Notes: generated from the letters alone by a model not told the origin. 64,000 bases of DNA from Lepidodermella squamata (GCA_047495785.1 JBLDXI010000029.1:1984001-2048000), one strand, 5' to 3'; numbered from the stretch's first letter, positions 7,286 through 49,577 are shown. Numbers and translations are program-made.

Positions 7286-9115
7286 TTAGCAACCGCCACC
7301 AGCACCACAACCTCCCCCACCACCACCACCACCAACGCCACCACCACCGAAACCTCCTCCTCCTACCCAACCTCCGGTCGCTACAAAAAACAAGTAGAAA
7401 AAGGGAATTGATAACACAAACTACGTGAGCGAAATCAACGTCAGTGATATAGAAAATAGTCTCTCGATTGGGAACTTGTTGATCATAGACAATGATGTTA
7501 CATCATTGTCTATGTTGTTGATACATGAGCATTGATTTAGGAGGGTCAAATTTAAGAAAATTACGACTTACCCCGGATTGCGCGTTGTCGTTCATTCTCT
7601 GCCGCTATCTCCTGCTGCACGTCAGGTTCGGCCGCGTAGGCAGCAGGAAGGCAGCACATACACGATGAGTAGTGATCCGGTTTTCCAACCTTTTGTCGAT
7701 TGCTGCATTTGAAACACATCGAAAACCAAACGATGATGTAGCTCACCGTCAGCAGAATTTGAACCGCGAAGATTGCCCAGCCGATAGGCCAGGATATCAA
7801 AGTATGATTGAAGCATGGTCTCGTCAGGGTGTAGACAAACCCGGCAAGGAAGGATGTGTACAATATGGCCAGAAGAATATCCTGTAAAGTGTAACATCAT
7901 GTTTTAAGGAAGTACCATAGCTCATACAGGTATCTTAGAAGCTCCACCAGTAATTGTTCACAATTCAATAAAAAACCATTCGTCATGACAATAATAAAGC
8001 TCTCCTACCAAAAGCATATCGTAAGCCCAGCTGTAGCATCTCTTGACCAATAGCTGTAGGACAACGGTCATTAAGCCAAACAATGACGGCATGATGATCC
8101 ATCCTGAGTACGGCCATTTCTGCTTTAGTAGATGCTCCGCGCCAACTTTGGCAACTTTTTCTTGATAACGGCTCAGGTCGACAATATAGGCTATTGATAG
8201 AGCTAAGCCTACAATGTTGAGTACAAGCTGTAGGAGTCTGGCGATTCCATAGCCCGATCGCAGTCTAATTGAAATTATGCTCGGCGATGGAATGTCGGGC
8301 CTCGCTATTGCCATTTGTTGATTGCTCTCTGCTCTCTCCAGCTGAACTTCAGGGTCGGCCGCATAGGCAGCAGAAAGGCAGAACATGAAAACTGAGTAGT
8401 GATCAGGTTTTCCAATCAGTTGCTGATTGCTGCATTTGCAAAACATCGAGGACCAAACCGCGATGTAGCTAATCGTTAACAAAAATTGAACTGCAAAGAT
8501 TGCCCGGCCGATGGGCCACGAAATCAAAGTATGTTCGAAGCTTGGCCTCGTTATGATATAGACAAATGCGACAAGGAACGGTATGTACACTATTGCCAGA
8601 AGAACATCCTGTAAAATATAACAAAATGCTTTGTAGAAGCTACACAAATTATTTTTTTGCAAATCGATCCAATAATCTTTAGAGTAGAGAAATAATTTTG
8701 TAAAGTAAAGCTCCATTACCGAAGCCATGTTGTATGCCCAGCTGTAACATCTTTTGGCCAAAAGCTGTAGGACAGCTATTAATAGGCCAAAGAATGACGG
8801 CGTGATGACCCATCCTGAGTACAGCCAATTCTGCTGTAATAGATACTCTGCGCCAACTTTGACAGCCTCGTCTTTATAACGGCTCAGATCGACAATATAG
8901 GCTATTGATAGAGCTATATATACAATGTTGAGTATAAATTGAAGCAGTCTCGCAATTCCATAGCCCGATCGCAGTCTAATTGAAATTACGCTCGGTTCAT
9001 TTGTGACGGGTGGGTGTGCTGGAATGGTAGGCCTCGCTAAAACAATAACTGCCGGCTGATGAGTGGAGAACTGAACCTCGTTGCGATAAAATTGATGAGC
9101 AGCTTGAAATGGCAT
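7286..9115 (-). CDS. Fused double-domain (8-TM) copy G3; exons 9115-8720, 8608-8009 (chimeric exon 2/exon 1), 7881-7572, 7380-7286
   Basis: ORF 7958..9133 shows the exon 2 end (ESNQQMAI) running in frame into a second exon 1 (ARPDIPSPSIISIRLRSG). All splice sites are canonical; the tail ends GGCGAGGGC*. Confidence 0.8.
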
Positions 9116-10131
9116 TGAAAATATATGAATCAAGCATGCTCATGCGAGTTGCTTGATTCAAAGAATGTATTAGGTCTGACTCATACCTGAGTGAAATTGT
9201 TCTCAAGTTGCGACATAACAAGTCTTCAGATTTAGCGGAACATTTGGTTTATAACATTGGTTGACACGTTTAAGATCCGCTACACATCAAGCTAGTGCAA
9301 AGAGCTACGCATGAGCAAAGACTGACTAAATGCAACACTTCTATATACTTTTTACGTATATACATGTATATTTCTGTTCTATAGTTTTAGTGACTTTTGG
9401 AGAGCAGAGAGTCGTTTTTTCCTGCTTCATTACTCATGGATCACAGCGAAACTGATAAAAATTTCGACTTTGCGCTCGTCCCTCTGATTGCTTCCGGAAA
9501 GCTTGGCATTTGGCAGGAGACGTAGCTAGGACGCCGAAGCTTGATCCCTGCCATACAAAGTGACACGTTGGTGTTATGCATGATTCTGAACACTTTACCT
9601 TTTGCAAACATTAAATTTTCAGGGTTCAATAAAAATAATTAATTCCTGAATTTAATAAATCGAAGTGGATGTTCGTACATAATTATGTACAACTATTTAA
9701 CTATTCATACAATTCAGTCACAATTTTCAAATTTCCGCTAGATGATAAAAAGAGCACGAACATTTAATGAGGTGATTCATCTCACTATTTTCAAAAAGCG
9801 ACCTTTGACACTAATTATTCTAAATTATTCTAAATATTTGCCGAGGAAGCAGTAAGTGACGCCTCAAATCCTGTTTCCTCAAAGCTTGTCGCTGAACTTT
9901 CTGTTGTTGCGAGAAAATGGCTTGATTTAGCCCTGAAGAGGAACACCTGAAATGCCTTTATTTAGGTACAAAATGAGGACAGTAAATCGTCAAGCCTTTT
10001 CAGCTTCTTTAAAAGCGATTCAGATTAATACGATTAGCTGGTTATTGTCTGAAACAAGCTCAGCAGGCCAAGCTAAGCAACTCAGCTTAATAGTCGTCAA
10101 GTCCCGCGTATTCCATTGCTGAAACCTATTT

Positions 10132-14325: not shown

Positions 14326-17300
14326 AGTGAAAACAAAAACTGAGTGTTCAGTGATATATTTATCTAAGGCTTAATGATAGGACTTACGTTTCATTGTGTT
14401 TAGCCTAGCTATCTCTGCTCTCTCCGCCTGAACTTCAGGGTCGTCCGCATAGGCTGCAGAAATGAAGCACATGTTAACTGAGTAGTGATCCGGTTTTCCA
14501 ACCAGTTGTCGATTGCTGCATTTGCAACACATGGTGAACCAAACGACGAAGTAGCTCATCGTCAGCAACGATTGCACTGCGACGATCGCCCAGCCGATGG
14601 GCCACGAAATCAAAGTATGTTCGAAGCCTGGTCTCGTTAAGTTGTAGACAAAGCCGGCAAGAAATGGCGCATACAATATAGCCAGGAGAGAATCCTGTTA
14701 AATATGTTAACATGTCGTTAGAAACGTTGAATAACTCGGATTTAGGTTTGTTTACTTCCATTTCATGATGATAGGTGACAAGTATAAAGTCTTTTGTTAT
14801 TGCCTCGTCAATCCACGTTAAAAAGCCGCTTTTTACTTGTCACCCGTGCCCTTCGACCGGATATAAACAAGCCGAAATCCGAGTTATTCAACGTCGCTAA
14901 CGATGTTTTTAACAAAATCTCATAGAAGCTCCGCCAGTTAGTTTACGCAATTTAATCGAATAATCTGCATATCAAATAAGGTGTAAGCGAATCCGCCACG
15001 GAATAGCATGAATAACATGGTAAGGAGAATATCCTGTTGTGAAAATTATCATGCTACTCATACGTTTCTAGTGATTCATTCATATAAGAGAGATAAATTA
15101 AGCGTATCCTAATTATTATTCCTAGGTAATTAATATAATTATTAGTAGAAAAACATATCTCTCTTACCGAAATCTTATCGTAGGCCCAACAGTGGCAACT
15201 TTTGACCAGAAGCTGCAGGACAGCGGCTAAAAGGCCGAAGAAAGACGGCGTGATGATCCATCCTGAGTACGGCCATTCCTTCTGAAATATTGAAGCATCA
15301 CCAGCAGCAACAACTTTGTCTTTATAAAGGCTCAGATCGATGATATAGACTATCGCTAGAGCCATGTATACAATGTTGAGTACAAGTTGAAGCAGTCTTG
15401 CGATTCCATAGCCTGATTACAGTCTTATTGAAATCAAGCTCGGTTTAGGTCTGACTATCTCAACATCAATGATGGGTGGTTGGGCGTAAATGGTGGGCCT
15501 GGCTATGAGACATAAACTGCCGGTCGAAGAGAAGCAAGCTGCTGCTCATTTTGCTCAGGACCGTACACCGCTAGCGGATGGGTTGAGAGTGAAAACAAAA
15601 ACTGAGTGTTCAGTGATATATTTATCTAAGGCTTAATGATAGGACTTACGTTTCATTGTGTTTAGCCTAGCTATCTCTGCTCTCTCCGCCTGAACTTCAG
15701 GGTCGTCCGCATAGGCTGCAGAAATGAAGCACATGTTAACTGAGTAGTGATCCGGTTTTCCAACCAGTTGTCGATTGCTGCATTTGCAACACATGGTGAA
15801 CCAAACGACGAAGTAGCTCATCGTCAGCAACGATTGCACTGCGACGATCGCCCAGCCGATGGGCCACGAAATCAAAGTATGTTCGAAGCCTGGTCTCGTT
15901 AAGTTGTAGACAAAGCCGGCAAGAAATGGCGCATACAATATAGCCAGGAGAGAATCCTGTTAAATATGTTAACATGTCGTTAGAAACGTTGAATAACTCG
16001 GATTTAGGTTTGTTTACTTCCATTTCATGATGATAGGTGACAAGTATAAAGTCTTTTGTTATTGCCTCGTCAATCCACGTTAAAAAGCCGCTTTTTACTT
16101 GTCACCCGTGCCCTTCGACCGGATATAAACAAGCCGAAATCCGAGTTATTCAACGTCGCTAACGATGTTTTTAACAAAATCTCATAGAAGCTCCGCCAGT
16201 TAGTTTACGCAATTTAATCGAATAATCTGCATATCAAATAAGGTGTAAGCGAATCCGCCACGGAATAGCATGAATAACATGGTAAGGAGAATATCCTGTT
16301 GTGAAAATTATCATGCTACTCATACGTTTCTAGTGATTCATTCATATAAGAGAGATAAATTAAGCGTATCCTAATTATTATTCCTAGGTAATTAATATAA
16401 TTATTAGTAGAAAAACATATCTCTCTTACCGAAATCTTATCGTAGGCCCAACAGTGGCAACTTTTGACCAGAAGCTGCAGGACAGCGGCTAAAAGGCCGA
16501 AGAAAGACGGCGTGATGATCCATCCTGAGTACGGCCATTCCTTCTGAAATATTGAAGCATCACCAGCAGCAACAACTTTGTCTTTATAAAGGCTCAGATC
16601 GATGATATAGACTATCGCTAGAGCCATGTATACAATGTTGAGTACAAGTTGAAGCAGTCTTGCGATTCCATAGCCTGATTACAGTCTTATTGAAATCAAG
16701 CTCGGTTTAGGTCTGACTATCTCAACATCAATGATGGGTGGTTGGGCGTAAATGGTGGGCCTGGCTATGAGACATAAACTGCCGGTCGAAGAGAAGCAAG
16801 CTGCTGCTCATTTTGCTCAGGACCGTACACCGCTAGCGGATGGGTTGAGAGTGAAAACAAAAACTGAGTGTTCAGTGATATATTTATCTAAGGCTTAATG
16901 ATAGGACTTACGTTTCATTGTGTTTAGCCTAGCTATCTCTGCTCTCTCCGCCTGAACTTCAGGGTCGTCCGCATAGGCTGCAGAAATGAAGCACATGTTA
17001 ACTGAGTAGTGATCCGGTTTTCCAACCAGTTGTCGATTGCTGCATTTGCAACACATGGTGAACCAAACGACGAAGTAGCTCATCGTCAGCAACGATTGCA
17101 CTGCGACGATCGCCCAGCCGATGGGCCACGAAATCAAAGTATGTTCGAAGCCTGGTCTCGTTAAGTTGTAGACAAAGCCGGCAAGAAATGGCGCATACAA
17201 TATAGCCAGGAGAGAATCCTGTTAAATATGTTAACATGTCGTTAGAAACGTTGAATAACTCGGATTTAGGTTTGTTTACTTCCATTTCATGATGATAGGT

Positions 17301-17872
17301 GACAAGTATAAAGTCTTTTGTTATTGCCTCGTCAATTCACGTTAAAAAGCCGCTTTTTACTTGTCACCCGTGCCCTTCGACCGGATATAAACAAGCCGAA
17401 ATCCGAGTTATTCAACGTCGCTAACGATGTTTTTAACAAAATCTCATAGAAGCTCCGCCAGTTAGTTTACGCAATTTAATCGAATAATCTGCATATCAAA
17501 TAAGGTGTAAGCGAATCCGCCACGGAATAGCATGAATAACATGGTAAGGAGAATATCCTGTTGTGAAAATTATCATGCTACTCATACGTTTCTAGTGATT
17601 CATTCATATAAGAGAGATAAATTAAGCGTATCCTAATTATTATTCCTAGGTAATTAATATAATTATTAGTAGAAAAACATATCTCTCTTACCGAAATCTT
17701 ATCGTAGGCCCAACAGTGGCAACTTTTGACCAGAAGCTGCAGGACAGCGGCTAAAAGGCCGAAGAAAGACGGCGTGATGATCCATCCTGAGTACGGCCAT
17801 TCCTTCTGAAATATTGAAGCATCACCAGCAGCAACAACTTTGTCTTTATAAAGGCTCAGATCGATGATATAG
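14080..17872. repeat. Near-perfect tandem triplication, unit 1262 bp (contains chimeric partial copies G7 and G8)
   Basis: Identical ORFs at 14371/15633/16895 and 15054/16316. I saw only one substitution (caatccacg vs caattcacg near 17336). Both ends fall in exon 1 coding homology. Confidence 0.95.
14715..14903. mobile_element. 189-bp MITE with TCGTTAG termini and TG 2-bp TSD in intron 1 (repeated at +1262 and +2524)
   Basis: TIR tcgttagaaacgttgaataactcggattt / aaatccgagttattcaacgtcgctaacga; absent from paralogous introns (13.7 kb, 55.9 kb). Confidence 0.8.
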
Positions 17873-18285
17873 GCTATTGATAGAGCCATGTATACAATGT
17901 TGAGTATAAGTTGAAGCAGTCTTGCGATTCTATAGCCTGATCGCAATCTAATTGAAATTAAGCTCAGTTTAGGTCTGACTATCTCAACATCAATGATGGG
18001 TGGTTCGACATTCTCAGCATTCATGACGGTTGGGTGTGCTTGAATGGTTGGCCTCGATATGAAATAAACCGGCGGTCGATGAGAAGCTAACTGCTGCTCA
18101 TATTGTTGAGCTTTGTTGGCTAGTCGAGACTCATAAACCACTGGCCGGTTGGTAGAGAGCTGCAGGTGGTCGGGATGAAATTGGGTAGCGACTGGAGGAC
18201 CACTATGAACCGGTTGATGAATTGCGAACGGAGGCTCATTGCCATTGAATTGGCGAGCAGATGGAGGGGCAGCTTGAAGCTCCAT
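16765..18285 (-). CDS. Copy G9; exons 18285-17692, 17218-16912 and a possible substitute last exon 16832-16765
   Basis: Promoter, uORF and exons 1-2 are intact. The native Gly/Cys exon is missing downstream; a cryptic tag| acceptor gives PVYGPEQNEQQLASLRPAVYVS*. Confidence 0.6.
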
Positions 18286-47648: not shown

Positions 47649-49577
47649 TCAGAATAAAGAAACACTTTTCTTGTACGAATGACTGTATGAATCGAGGTTC
47701 CGCAGGAACCGAAGATGAATACAGTCATGAGTATTGAAAAAAAGAGAAATTGAGAGTGAAAACAAAAACACGAGCGAAATCTGAGTGATAGGAAAAAATG
47801 ATAATTTACCTCGTATTGCGATTTGCCGATCAATATCCGCTCTCACCAGCTGAACTTCAGGGTCAGCCGCATAGGCAGCAGAAATGCAGCACATGTTAAC
47901 GGAGTAGTGATCCGGTTTTCCAATCAGTTGCCGATTGCTGCATTTGCAACACATCGAGAACCAAACGATGATGCAGCTTATTGTCAGCAAAAATTGAACT
48001 GCAAAGATTGCCCAGCCGATGGGCCAGGATATCAGATTATGTACGAAGCATGGTCTCGTTAGAGTGTAGAGAAATCCGGCAAGGAACGATATGTTCAATA
48101 TGGCCAGAACAATATCCTGTGAAATATGGCAACTTAACTTTTCAAAAAAGCCTCTTAGAAGCTCTGAATTCGATCAAATAATCTGTAGGGCAGAAAAATA
48201 AGTTGGTTGAATAAGCACACTTACCGAAACCATGTCGTAAGCCCAGCTGTGGCATCTTTTGACCAAAAGCTGTAGGACAGCAACCAAGAGGCCGAAGAAA
48301 GACGGCGTAATGACCCAGCCGGAGTATAGCCAATGCTGCCGTAGTCGATACTCATCGCCAACTTCGACAACTTCGTCTTTATAAAGGCTCAGATCGACGA
48401 TATAGGCTATCGCTAGAGCCATGTATGCAATGTTGAGTAAAAGCTGAAGCAGTCTTGCGATTCCATAGCCTGATCGCAGCCTGATTGAAATTAGGCTCGG
48501 TTTAGGTTTGACATCCTCAATATCAATCACTGATGGCTGTGATTGAATGTTCGGCCCCGCTATGACGTAAATCGCCGACCGAGGATCAGTGAACTGCTGC
48601 TCGCTGCGATGTAATTGGTTAGCAGAATCATAAACAGCCGATCGATTGATGTTATTATTGATCTGCTGGTTGCTGGGAGAAAGTCGGTAAGCAAATGGAG
48701 GATAATTGCGATGAAATTGGTAAGCAGGTGGTGAATCAGGTTGAAACGTGTGCTGGTGTCTGCTTCTAGACTCAGAACGGTGTGGAAGGGCACGCGTTGA
48801 TGCTGGGCGACTGACTGGGGTAGCGCTCGTCGCTTCAACGGCCGGCTTTGGTCGCGCCACGGGGTCCTGAAACGGCGCAACCCGGGCACGCTCGCGCTTG
48901 TGTAAGGCCCGGATCGCTAAATAGCGGACGTGGCGTCGTAGCTTTTCGGGGCTATCATCCAGCTCAGCCAATTCTCGGCGCTCTATTTTCAACCAGTCTT
49001 TGCGAGCATCAGGCGACATGAGTTGTAGTAGCCAATCAAGTTGACGGTCCAGGCTGTCGGCGCGGGCGTTGGGCCGTGTACACCGTCGGGGAGAGCCAGC
49101 GGCCTCACGGGTGAAAGCCGTCGTTTGCAGTTTCGACTCGGGCGTAACGGGTTCATAAGCGCCACAGGTTGCAGCAGAACGACTCCGGCGAGGCTTTTCC
49201 AGAGGCAACTGTGCTGCAGCTGAAGCGGCCGGCTTGAGCTTGTCCTTGGAGAGACTTTTATTCAACGTTGAGGCCCCGCCCGTCGCTGGCGGGTAAGCCG
49301 TAAGCGTCTTGGGCACCTTCGTTTTTGCTGCTGTTTTCTTGCCGGTCATGTTGCTTTTCTCGGCCGATCCACCAGTTGTGGCGGGGACTGGTTCTAGAAT
49401 CAAAACGAGACGTTTCGTCGAAAAGCAGCTTTTATTTTATTTGATAAAACAGGCCCTGAGCGGGAAATCGTTCAATAATGAAAATATCATACGAACAGGT
49501 GGACACGTTCGCATACCGGGTTCGTGGGCAGGTGGAGCAGTTGGCCGGACGAGATAGAAAATAAGACTGGTTCTCAT
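47649..49577 (-). CDS. Copy G18 with captured N-terminal domain; putative exons 49577-49517, 49393-48225, 48116-47810; Gly/Cys exon lost
   Basis: 409-aa ORF paralogous to G4. An upstream mini-exon MRTSLIFYLVRPTAPPAHEP splices in phase (gtatgc...tag). The exon 3 acceptor is replaced by unrelated sequence; read-through stop at 47649. Confidence 0.65.

What the first reader, a model, noticed from the sequence alone, without database searches (positions are those of the whole stretch)
7286..9115. In-frame head-to-tail fusion creating an 8-TM double-domain protein
Seen: a deletion joins the end of exon 2 of one copy to mid exon 1 of the next (QQMAI|ARPDIP), removing the tail, intergenic DNA and promoter. 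Both halves are open, and they resemble different paralogs (first half G15/G11-like, second half G17-like). Intron 1 (111 nt) is also stop-free and in frame. Known: MYADM has two tandem MARVEL domains. Inference: convergent origin of a covalent dimer, which hints that family members oligomerise.
Basis: partly seen in the sequence, partly recalled or inferred. Interest (0 to 1): 0.75.

Follow-up and report, generated by a model that had tools for sequence, protein, structure and literature searches.

The report
Two neighbouring membrane-protein genes fused
In a small invertebrate's fast-changing array of about 20 four-helix membrane-protein genes, a deletion of roughly 1-2 kb has welded two neighbouring copies in frame into one intact gene for an eight-helix, two-unit protein. 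It is a clean textbook-style example of how tandem-domain proteins arise, but nothing yet shows that it is expressed.

Summary
On the minus strand, exon 2 of one paralog stops 5 nt before its splice donor and runs directly, in frame, into codon ~26 of exon 1 of the next paralog (8306|8305, QQMAI|ARPDIP). The resulting 4-exon model (9115-8720, 8608-8009, 7881-7572, 7380-7286) has 466 codons, no stop, canonical splice sites, 4+4 hydrophobic helices, a ~69-residue linker and one Gly/Cys-rich tail.

The join has only 2-3 nt of microhomology, so it is a non-homologous deletion, not unequal crossover.

Terminal-branch dN/dS is 0.30 and 0.35, against a family median of 0.36. If the gene were dead, the intact frame would limit the fusion's age to about 2% neutral divergence.

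Three points argue for caution:
- The same array holds a second, clearly dead head-to-tail junction, amplified as identical 1262-bp units.
- Skipping the 600-nt fused exon would give an ordinary single-unit protein.
- No transcript, read or relative could be reached, because this species is absent from the databases.

MARVEL membership is only sub-threshold. The "covalent dimer, so the family oligomerises" inference is plausible but untested. This is a new instance of a known kind of event, of moderate interest.

The parts
9116..9445 (-). Upstream (promoter-proximal/5'UTR) region of unit A, retained
   Evidence: It is 75-77% identical to the upstream regions of g39 and g46 over ~300 nt. Blocks are conserved across six paralogs, including two TGAGTCA motifs, and the start context is the same (MPFQAA.. 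/ MPLQAA.. / MPIQAA..).
8720..9115 (-). Exon 1a: N-terminal region, TM1 and TM2 of unit A (132 codons, ends in phase 0, donor GTAATG)
   Evidence: Hydrophobic segments at residues 57-75 and 102-120. Terminal-branch omega 0.12 (95% CI 0.06-0.24).
8609..8719 (-). Intron 1a, 111 nt, GT..AG, open in frame (37 codons), GC 0.26
   Evidence: The intron position is conserved in all paralogs. The open frame is compatible with chance (1 of 14 introns).
8306..8608 (-). Exon 2 part of unit A (TM3, TM4, cytosolic CKC / KPDHYS / AAYAADPEV motifs); breaks off 5 nt before the family's donor site
   Evidence: All 21 family-invariant exon-2 positions are retained. Omega 0.51 (0.24-1.13).
8303..8308 (-). Deletion junction (8306|8305; ..QQMAI|ARPDIP..), 2-3 nt microhomology AT/ATA
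   Evidence: DNA alignments with paralog exon-2 ends and exon-1 middles.
8009..8305 (-). Exon 1 part of unit B, from about codon 26 onward (TM1, TM2); lacks ATG and promoter; 21-nt in-frame gap in the pre-TM1 linker relative to its sister g46
   Evidence: Sister to g46 at 99/97. Omega 0.40 (0.19-0.97).
7882..8008 (-). Intron 1b, 127 nt, GTAGGA..TTTACAG, contains stops
7572..7881 (-). Exon 2b (TM3, TM4 and C-terminal cytosolic region of unit B), complete, ends in phase 1 with donor GTAAGT
   Evidence: Omega 0.31 (0.16-0.63).
7381..7571 (-). Intron 2b (191 nt) with a perfect 15+15-nt palindrome at 7484-7514
   Evidence: The palindrome has copies on five other contigs.
7286..7380 (-). Exon 3: Gly/Cys-rich tail (31 residues, ends ..GGGC) plus TAA stop; the only tail left in the fused gene
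   Evidence: The same kind of tail exon follows exon 2 in g56, g51, g46, g14, g11 and g06.
14386..18171 (-). Comparator: a second, independent head-to-tail junction type (intron 2 joined to mid exon 1), present as three 1262-bp units, two of them 100% identical; the exon-1 pieces carry a TAA stop and a 2-nt insertion

Best explanation
This is a real, lineage-specific gene fusion caught at an early stage.

The setting is a tandem array of about 20 co-oriented paralogs. Each encodes a four-helix membrane protein (MARVEL-like in its first two helices) with a short Gly/Cys-rich tail. A non-homologous deletion of about 1.1-1.8 kb, with 2-3 nt of microhomology, removed everything between the penultimate codons of exon 2 of one copy and about codon 26 of exon 1 of the next copy.

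The join fell exon-to-exon and in frame. The locus now has one family-type upstream region, four exons, three canonical introns and one tail. If it is transcribed and spliced in the usual way, it gives a 466-residue protein with two complete four-helix units joined by a ~69-residue cytosolic linker.

A four-helix unit has both ends on the same side of the membrane. The second unit can therefore insert in its native orientation, and the product would be a covalent tandem of two different paralogs.

Shown: the junction, the gene model, the ancestry of the halves, the intact frame and splice sites, and purifying selection along the halves' terminal branches.

Inferred: that it is transcribed, that the fused exon is included, and that the product works as a two-unit protein.
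For: - Junction and gene model.
- Spliced model: 466 codons, no internal stop, 4+4 hydrophobic segments.
- Tail: a family-type tail exon is present only after unit B.
- Upstream region: the family-type region and start codon are retained before unit A.
- Ancestry: the halves derive from different, old paralog lineages. Unit B matches g46 at 80% over ~980 nt, including both introns and the tail. Unit A matches g39 at 80% over ~780 nt.
- Conservation: both halves keep all 21+21 family-invariant residues. They have only 2 and 3 private changes at otherwise invariant columns, against 1-5 in intact paralogs.
- Selection: terminal-branch dN/dS is 0.30 (unit A) and 0.35 (unit B), against a family median of 0.36 and 0.61 for the stop-bearing g14.
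- Decay bound: under neutrality the whole gene would stay intact with P<0.05 beyond ~2% divergence, while the terminal branches have dS of ~0.25.
- Assembly: a join between non-homologous positions is not what a repeat collapse produces.
Against: - No transcript, raw read or orthologue could be reached. The species and its close kin are absent from the protein and contig collections: the control gene's best hit is only 57% identical, and the family searches were blank.
- The in-frame outcome has a 1/3 prior.
- The array is demonstrably unstable. It holds very recent events (100%-identical 1262-bp units) and another head-to-tail junction that is dead, so a young non-functional deletion is quite possible.
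- The inner, fused exon has a higher terminal-branch omega (0.45, CI 0.25-0.80) than the outer exons (0.20, CI 0.11-0.33), with P(inner<=outer)=0.011. This would fit use of an exon-skipped single-unit isoform.
- Unit A's intron-1 donor (GTAATG) departs from the family's usual GTAAGA/GTAGGA.
- There is no second haplotype copy in the assembly to confirm the junction.
Confidence: 0.5

Rival explanations
1. Young, non-functional by-product. The deletion is real but recent (less than ~2% neutral divergence ago). The frame is intact only because there has not been time for decay, and the in-frame join is a 1-in-3 accident. The locus is on its way to becoming one more pseudogene of the array.
For: - The array contains many broken copies: g44, g32, g25, g20, g12, g14, u15 and u16.
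- It contains very recent rearrangements: two 1262-bp units with 0 differences, and g18 versus u16 at dS 0.02.
- It contains a second junction type that is dead.
- Terminal-branch omega mostly reflects pre-fusion history, so it cannot exclude this reading.
- The inner exon's omega is somewhat raised.
Against: - The time window is narrow: P(intact)<0.05 beyond ~2% divergence.
- If the raised inner omega were due to post-fusion neutrality (~0.066 substitutions per site), the 600-nt exon would be open with only ~1-8% probability. The two arguments for decay therefore cannot both hold.
- There is no excess of private changes at conserved columns.
- The promoter region and all six splice sites are intact.
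Confidence: 0.27
2. Functional locus, but as a single-unit hybrid. Exon 1 ends in phase 0, exon 2 starts in phase 0 and the fused exon is 600 nt. Splicing e1a (9115-8720) directly to e2b (7881-7572) plus e3 gives an ordinary four-helix protein with a tail (~266 residues). The fused exon would then be a skipped or minor cassette.
For: - Phases and lengths allow it.
- Outer exons show stronger constraint (omega 0.20) than the inner exon (0.45), P=0.011.
- The neighbouring g18-to-g14 block has the same logic. g18's exon 2 has no tail exon of its own, and the next compatible tail acceptor lies ~3.6 kb downstream, beyond dead internal units.
Against: - Both splice sites of the fused exon are canonical and family-typical, so there is no reason from sequence to expect skipping.
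- The inner exon is still under purifying selection overall, with P(omega>=1)=0.006, and is fully open.
- Per-exon omega values of 0.4-0.8 also occur in intact paralogs, so the inner/outer contrast may be noise from ~100-codon samples and a post-hoc test.
Confidence: 0.15
3. Assembly artefact or a somatic or minor-haplotype deletion. The junction does not exist in the germline genome as assembled.
For: - Tandem arrays are hard to assemble.
- Two 1262-bp units nearby are 100% identical.
- No second copy of the locus exists in the assembly to cross-check.
- No independent contig carries the junction.
Against: - Mis-assemblies in repeats join homologous positions. This join links non-homologous positions (exon 2 end to exon 1 middle) of units that are only ~70-80% identical at the DNA level, with 2-3 nt of overlap.
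- Sequence on both sides is unique within the genome, with the next best match at 80%.
- Unit B carries its own private 21-nt in-frame gap and substitutions, which are typical of a real locus.
Confidence: 0.05

Closest known systems
MYADM (myeloid-associated differentiation marker), MAL family
   Same: One polypeptide with eight TM segments arranged as two tandem four-helix units. [quoted passage not shown]
   Different: - There is no detectable sequence relationship. No database hit of any kind was found, and MARVEL is only sub-threshold.
- MYADM is ancient and conserved. This fusion is confined to one genome, is flanked by its single-unit parents' relatives, and has not been shown to be expressed.
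- Here the two units come from different paralog lineages and are joined by a long (~69 aa) linker made of one unit's C-terminal region and the other's truncated N-terminal region.
Canonical MARVEL-domain proteins (PF01284: synaptophysin, synaptogyrin, MAL, CMTM, occludin)
   Same: - Four hydrophobic helices per unit.
- A TM1 entry motif that aligns with MARVEL.
- 11 of 15 exon-1 pieces hit PF01284 positions 2-58.
- MARVEL clusters rank first among named look-alikes in the ESM atlas.
   Different: - Scores are 14-17 bits against the 32.8-bit cut-off.
- Exon 2 (TM3-TM4) gives no MARVEL signal.
- hhalign against this genome's own canonical MARVEL domains is not significant.
- The family adds a membrane-proximal CCKC motif, KPDHYS and AAYAADPEV motifs and a Gly/Cys-rich tail ending in Cys.
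Fusion (chimeric) genes formed from tandem neighbours by deletion of the intervening DNA, the classical route to internally duplicated membrane proteins (own knowledge, not checked in the literature here)
   Same: - Two adjacent paralogs.
- Loss of the stop, terminator, intergenic DNA and promoter.
- The frame is preserved.
- An even number of helices per unit, so topology is kept.
   Different: Most known cases are inferred long after the event. Here the single-unit relatives, the exact breakpoint with its microhomology, and a failed sister event are all visible in the same array. Unlike Lepore-type hybrids from homologous unequal crossover, the join is between non-homologous positions and adds a domain instead of swapping parts.

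Membership tests
MARVEL domain superfamily (Pfam PF01284) | Score over the Pfam gathering threshold (32.8 bits) for the domain model | tested here: not met
   Exon 1a scores 17.2 bits (E 0.005) and exon 1b 14.2 bits (E 0.044). Exon 2 pieces give no hit. The 369-aa contiguous read scores 13 bits. In all, 11 of 15 paralog exon-1 pieces hit below threshold, with a best E of 0.003. The exons could only be tested apart, which lowers the scores.
MARVEL domain superfamily (Pfam PF01284) | Four transmembrane helices per domain with both termini on the same side | tested here: met
   The Kyte-Doolittle scan of the locally spliced model finds helices at 57-75, 102-120, 134-152 and 165-183 in unit A, and at 257-275, 302-320, 330-348 and 365-383 in unit B. 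Which side the termini face was not determined.
MARVEL domain superfamily (Pfam PF01284) | Profile-level or fold-level similarity to bona fide MARVEL proteins | tested here: inconclusive
   - hhalign of the exon profiles against three canonical MARVEL domains of the same genome gives probabilities of 0.2% and 0.1%, with only the TM1 motif aligned.
- PDB profile searches give nothing relevant.
- The AF2 single-sequence model is too poor for a fold search (pLDDT 53).
- In the ESM atlas the best named cluster is MARVEL (0.85, 170 features), but only 5 of the 10 best named hits agree.
MYADM-type tandem double-MARVEL proteins | Two complete four-helix units in one open reading frame | tested here: met
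   The spliced model has 466 codons with no stop and 4+4 helices. The junction is in frame.
MYADM-type tandem double-MARVEL proteins | Sequence homology to MYADM/MAL family members | tested here: not met
   There are no hits at E<=0.001 in 1.84 billion representatives or in the word searches. Any likeness is convergent architecture, not membership.
MYADM-type tandem double-MARVEL proteins | Expressed as a single polypeptide | not testable with these tools
   No RNA or protein data for this species could be reached. The control shows that the species is absent from the collection.
Fusion gene from tandem paralogs by intergenic deletion | The breakpoint joins the 3' part of one complete paralog to the 5' part of the next, with intervening tail, intergenic DNA and promoter missing | tested here: met
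   Alignments with 12 exon-2 ends and 18 exon-1 sequences. Tail exons are present in single-unit paralogs. Neighbour spacing is 1.06-1.7 kb.
Fusion gene from tandem paralogs by intergenic deletion | The two halves have separate ancestry (not a recent internal duplication) | tested here: met
   - In the exon-1 tree, FUS_B is sister to g46 (99/97) and FUS_A groups with g39 and g25 (84/83).
- The halves are 0.23-0.29 substitutions per site apart.
- DNA matches are 80% to g46 and to g39, including introns.
Fusion gene from tandem paralogs by intergenic deletion | A transcript spans the junction | not testable with these tools
   An exact 24-nt junction scan of metagenome contigs found nothing, and records of this genome may be hidden there. 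No protein fragment was found in any collection.

The most novel reading that the evidence does not exclude
The 466-residue protein is made and works as a covalent heterodimer of two diverged paralogs. That would mean the single-unit members of this orphan Gly/Cys-tailed four-helix family normally act as side-by-side oligomers. It would also be an independent, datable re-run of the step that produced eight-helix MYADM from a four-helix MARVEL ancestor, with the parental lineages, the exact breakpoint and a failed sister event all preserved in one array.
Probability: 0.3. Interest if true: 0.55.

Novelty: new member of a known kind. Interest (0 to 1): 0.35.

Why it matters
Internal duplication by fusion of neighbouring genes is thought to be the main way multi-domain membrane proteins arose. 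It is nearly always inferred from ancient products.

Here the event can be read base by base: the breakpoint and its microhomology, the lost parts, the surviving promoter, splice sites and tail, the single-unit relatives of each half, and a second junction in the same array that failed.

If the fused gene is expressed, it offers a natural experiment on three questions:
- whether members of this orphan family pair up in the membrane;
- how a new linker and a lost tail are tolerated;
- whether constraint shifts between the inner and outer parts after fusion.

If it is not expressed, it is simply one more casualty of an unstable array. It then mainly illustrates how often such arrays throw up in-frame chimeras.

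Tried and rejected
(1) Relatives and transcripts.
- Word searches with unit A (270 aa by reference, intron read through) and with the fused exon (200 aa) gave nothing.
- An exhaustive phmmer of unit A against 1.84 billion representatives gave 0 hits.
- An exact 24-nt junction scan and a family-profile scan of metagenome contigs gave nothing.
- A positive control showed why: this animal's conserved synaptophysin-like gene has a best hit of only 57% identity. These blanks therefore say nothing about expression and little about taxonomic range.

(2) Structure.
- MAFFT placed the exon-2 fragments onto exon 1 when they were given as partial rows, so no usable alignment could be built by reference.
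- The single-sequence AF2 model of unit A was poor (pLDDT 53, pTM 0.32), so no fold search was run.
It was assembled only inside local scripts from window coordinates, for length, hydropathy and codon statistics.

(3) Ancestral reconstruction. I did not work around this. I used pairwise Nei-Gojobori distances with a three-point branch decomposition instead.

(4) Ideas rejected.
- Intron 1a's open frame is not meaningful.
- Homologous unequal crossover is not the mechanism, because the joined positions are not homologous.
- The two halves are not recent copies of each other.

(5) Other points.
- I searched for an allelic second copy of the locus in the assembly, and there is none.
- The contig is not human: the genome is 121 Mb and earlier notes call it a small invertebrate.

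Full report
**What is there**

The window is G000:C29:1984001-2048000, from a 121-Mb, 151-contig eukaryotic genome. Earlier notes of this scan call it a small invertebrate, probably a gastrotrich, with spliced-leader trans-splicing. I did not verify that. It is not human.

From about 2.6 to 56.5 kb the minus strand carries roughly 20 copies of one gene family. Outside the window there is one further broken copy 19 kb away and one intact copy on contig C33.

The canonical gene has three exons:
- Exon 1 holds a variable P/Q-rich N-terminus plus two hydrophobic helices and ends in phase 0.
- Exon 2 holds two more helices and a conserved cytosolic region with CCKC, KPDHYS and AAYAADPEV motifs. It ends in phase 1.
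- Exon 3 is short and encodes 25-41 residues of Gly/Cys-rich tail that always ends in Cys.

A LINE (endonuclease plus reverse transcriptase) is inserted at 20.7-23.2 kb, and an unrelated receptor-type ORF lies beyond the array.

At 8306|8305 the coding sequence of one copy's exon 2 runs straight into the middle of the next copy's exon 1. Alignment with the exon-2 ends of 12 paralogs shows that unit A stops 5 nt short of the conserved donor. Alignment with 18 exon-1 sequences shows that unit B resumes at the ATAGCGAGGCC block, about 25 codons after the usual ATG.

Only 2-3 nt (AT/ATA) are shared at the join, and the two positions are not homologous. The event was therefore an end-joining or slippage-type deletion, not unequal crossover.

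Judged from the spacing of neighbouring genes, about 1.1-1.8 kb were lost: intron 2, the tail exon, the 3' end, the intergenic DNA, the promoter and the 5' end of unit B.

The resulting model is 9115-8720, 8608-8009, 7881-7572 and 7380-7286. It has 466 codons without a stop and three GT-AG introns. It predicts eight hydrophobic helices in a 4+4 arrangement, separated by a ~69-residue linker, and one tail.

I assembled this spliced model only inside local scripts, from window coordinates.

**Ancestry of the halves**

The exon-1 tree puts unit B as sister to g46 (99/97) and unit A with g39 and g25 (84/83). The exon-2 tree is star-like, with different nearest neighbours (g48, g11), which points to mosaic evolution in the array.

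At the DNA level:
- Unit B matches g46 at 80% over ~980 nt, including both introns and the tail exon.
- Unit A matches g39 at 80% over ~780 nt, including intron 1.

A neighbouring note places a captured N-terminal domain on G4 and G18. Only g11 and g48 carry such extensions.

The open 111-nt intron is the only open one among 14. With a per-intron chance of about 0.02, it is unremarkable.

**Is it alive?**

Several results fit a working gene:
- Both halves keep every family-invariant residue (21 in exon 1, 21 in exon 2).
- Their private changes at otherwise invariant columns number 2 and 3, within the 1-5 range of intact paralogs.
- Nei-Gojobori distances with a three-point branch decomposition give terminal-branch dN/dS of 0.30 (unit A) and 0.35 (unit B). 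The family median is 0.36, and the stop-bearing g14 gives 0.61.
- The upstream 330 nt of unit A is 75-77% identical to that of g39 and g46 and shares conserved blocks and the start context.

These terminal branches (dS about 0.25) mostly predate the fusion, which cannot be dated. What can be said is a bound. With 5% of substitutions creating stops, and an assumed (not measured) indel-to-substitution ratio of 0.05-0.2, a neutral copy would keep its frame, start and six splice sites with P<0.05 beyond about 2% divergence. So the gene is either maintained by selection or very young.

**Reasons for caution**

First, the array is visibly unstable. Eight or more copies are broken. A second kind of head-to-tail junction, with intron 2 joined to mid exon 1, sits at 14.4-18.2 kb as three 1262-bp units. 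Two of them have no differences at all, and their exon-1 pieces carry a TAA stop and a 2-nt insertion. Deletions between neighbours therefore recur here, recent events exist, and one of two junction types is dead. An in-frame exon-to-exon join is a 1-in-3 accident among such events.

Second, exon 1 ends in phase 0, exon 2 begins in phase 0, and the fused exon is 600 nt. Skipping it would give an ordinary single-unit hybrid with a tail. In line with that, the outer exons show an omega of 0.20 (0.11-0.33) and the inner exon 0.45 (0.25-0.80), with P(inner<=outer)=0.011 in 1000 codon bootstraps.

That contrast is post hoc and rests on ~100-codon pieces. Values of 0.4-0.8 also occur in intact paralogs, and the inner exon is still below 1 (P=0.006). 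Moreover, if neutrality after the fusion had raised omega that much, the 600-nt exon should by now be closed with ~92-99% probability.

Third, nothing external could be brought to bear. All searches for relatives, fragments or the junction itself were blank. The positive control shows that the species and its near kin are simply not in the collections, since the best hit for a conserved synaptophysin-like gene is 57% identical. The assembly holds no second, allelic copy of the locus.

**Family identity**

Evidence bearing on MARVEL membership:
- PF01284 hits 11 of 15 exon-1 pieces, always over profile positions 2-58, which is the correct half. The scores are only 14-17 bits against a cut-off of 32.8, and exon 2 gives nothing.
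- The genome has canonical MARVEL genes at 40-71 bits.
- hhalign of the family's exon profiles against three of those canonical domains is not significant. Only the TM1 entry motif aligns.
- PDB profile searches are empty or irrelevant.
- The ESM atlas ranks MARVEL clusters first among named families, but below its own reliability marks.
- A single-sequence AF2 model was too poor to use, and a by-reference alignment could not be built because MAFFT misplaced the exon fragments.

I therefore call it an orphan four-helix family with a MARVEL-like first half, and membership is inconclusive.

The MYADM parallel is correct as architecture: MYADM has eight TM segments as two tandem MARVEL domains, both needed for plasma-membrane targeting (PMC3078064). 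There is no homology to MYADM.

**Verdict**

- The mechanistic reading (an in-frame deletion fusing two diverged neighbours) is sound.
- The functional reading (a covalent dimer that reveals oligomerisation) is possible but untested. The long linker, the 1/3 prior, the dead sister junction and the exon-skipping alternative all weaken it.
- My probabilities are: real fusion encoding, and probably making, the two-unit protein, about 0.5; young dead by-product, about 0.27; functional only as an exon-skipped single-unit hybrid, about 0.15; artefact, about 0.05.
- It is a new instance of a well-known kind of event, unusually legible and of moderate interest.

Noticed in passing
window:14386-18171 (minus strand): There are three tandem 1262-bp units in which exon 2, its donor and ~55 nt of intron 2 run into mid exon 1 of the next unit. 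Units 14386-15647 and 15648-16909 are 100% identical. The internal exon-1 pieces carry a TAA stop (IRL*SGYG) and a 2-nt insertion. g18 (ATG at 18285) has no tail exon of its own, and the next Gly-tail acceptor is g14's, ~3.6 kb downstream.
   Followed up: partly
window: exon 3 of g56, g51, g46, g14, g11, g06 and the fusion (e.g. 7286-7380): All single-unit paralogs with a findable third exon end in a 25-41-residue Gly/Cys-rich tail whose last residue is Cys (..GGGC, or CGC in g06). A conserved CCKC motif also follows TM4. Both look like candidate lipidation sites. Each fusion half has lost one Cys of the CC pair (FCKC in unit A, CFKC in unit B).
   Followed up: no
window:11067-11741 and 48632-49403 (minus strand): g11 and g48 have long N-terminal extensions (225 and 257 residues) in frame with exon 1, with no Pfam hit. 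This is the 'captured domain' of another note on this window. It is a further kind of chimera in the same array.
   Followed up: partly
window:7484-7514: A perfect 15+15-nt palindrome (1-nt spacer) lies inside intron 2 of the fused gene. Copies of 31-49 nt at 85-100% identity sit on contigs C33, C17, C13, C2 and C10, matching on both strands. It may be a small foldback or MITE-like repeat.
   Followed up: no
window:20657-23191 (+ strand): An 844-aa ORF with endonuclease (Exo_endo_phos_2) and reverse-transcriptase (RVT_1, 108 bits) domains. This is a LINE inserted in the array on the opposite strand, next to the broken copies g20 and g25.
   Followed up: partly
window:9116-9445 and the equivalent regions upstream of g39, g46, g44, g06, g31: The upstream regions of six paralogs align, with conserved blocks including two TGAGTCA (AP-1/TRE-like) motifs. 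g06 has ATT where the others have the ATG start.
   Followed up: partly
window:32721-33555 (minus strand): g35 has no Gly-tail exon that I could find. An AG 690 nt after its exon-2 donor would read in phase into exon 1 of g32 with an open frame of 191 codons. This may be another conjoined pair or mere chance. g32's exon 2 is itself truncated and runs into GC-rich sequence.
   Followed up: no
window: whole array (exon 1 versus exon 2 trees): Exon 1 and exon 2 of the same genes have different nearest relatives. Examples are FUS_A (g39/g25 by exon 1, g48 by exon 2) and g14 (5' like u15/u16, 3' like g56). This points to gene conversion or recombination mosaics across the array.
   Followed up: partly
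L003 (G000:C24:1801272-1801874) and L005-L007: The genome has canonical MARVEL genes, including a synaptophysin-like one in a single 323-aa open frame. Its nearest database relative is only 57% identical and sits on unnamed environmental contigs (ENA ERZ27332993, Logan SRR10912804).
   Followed up: partly
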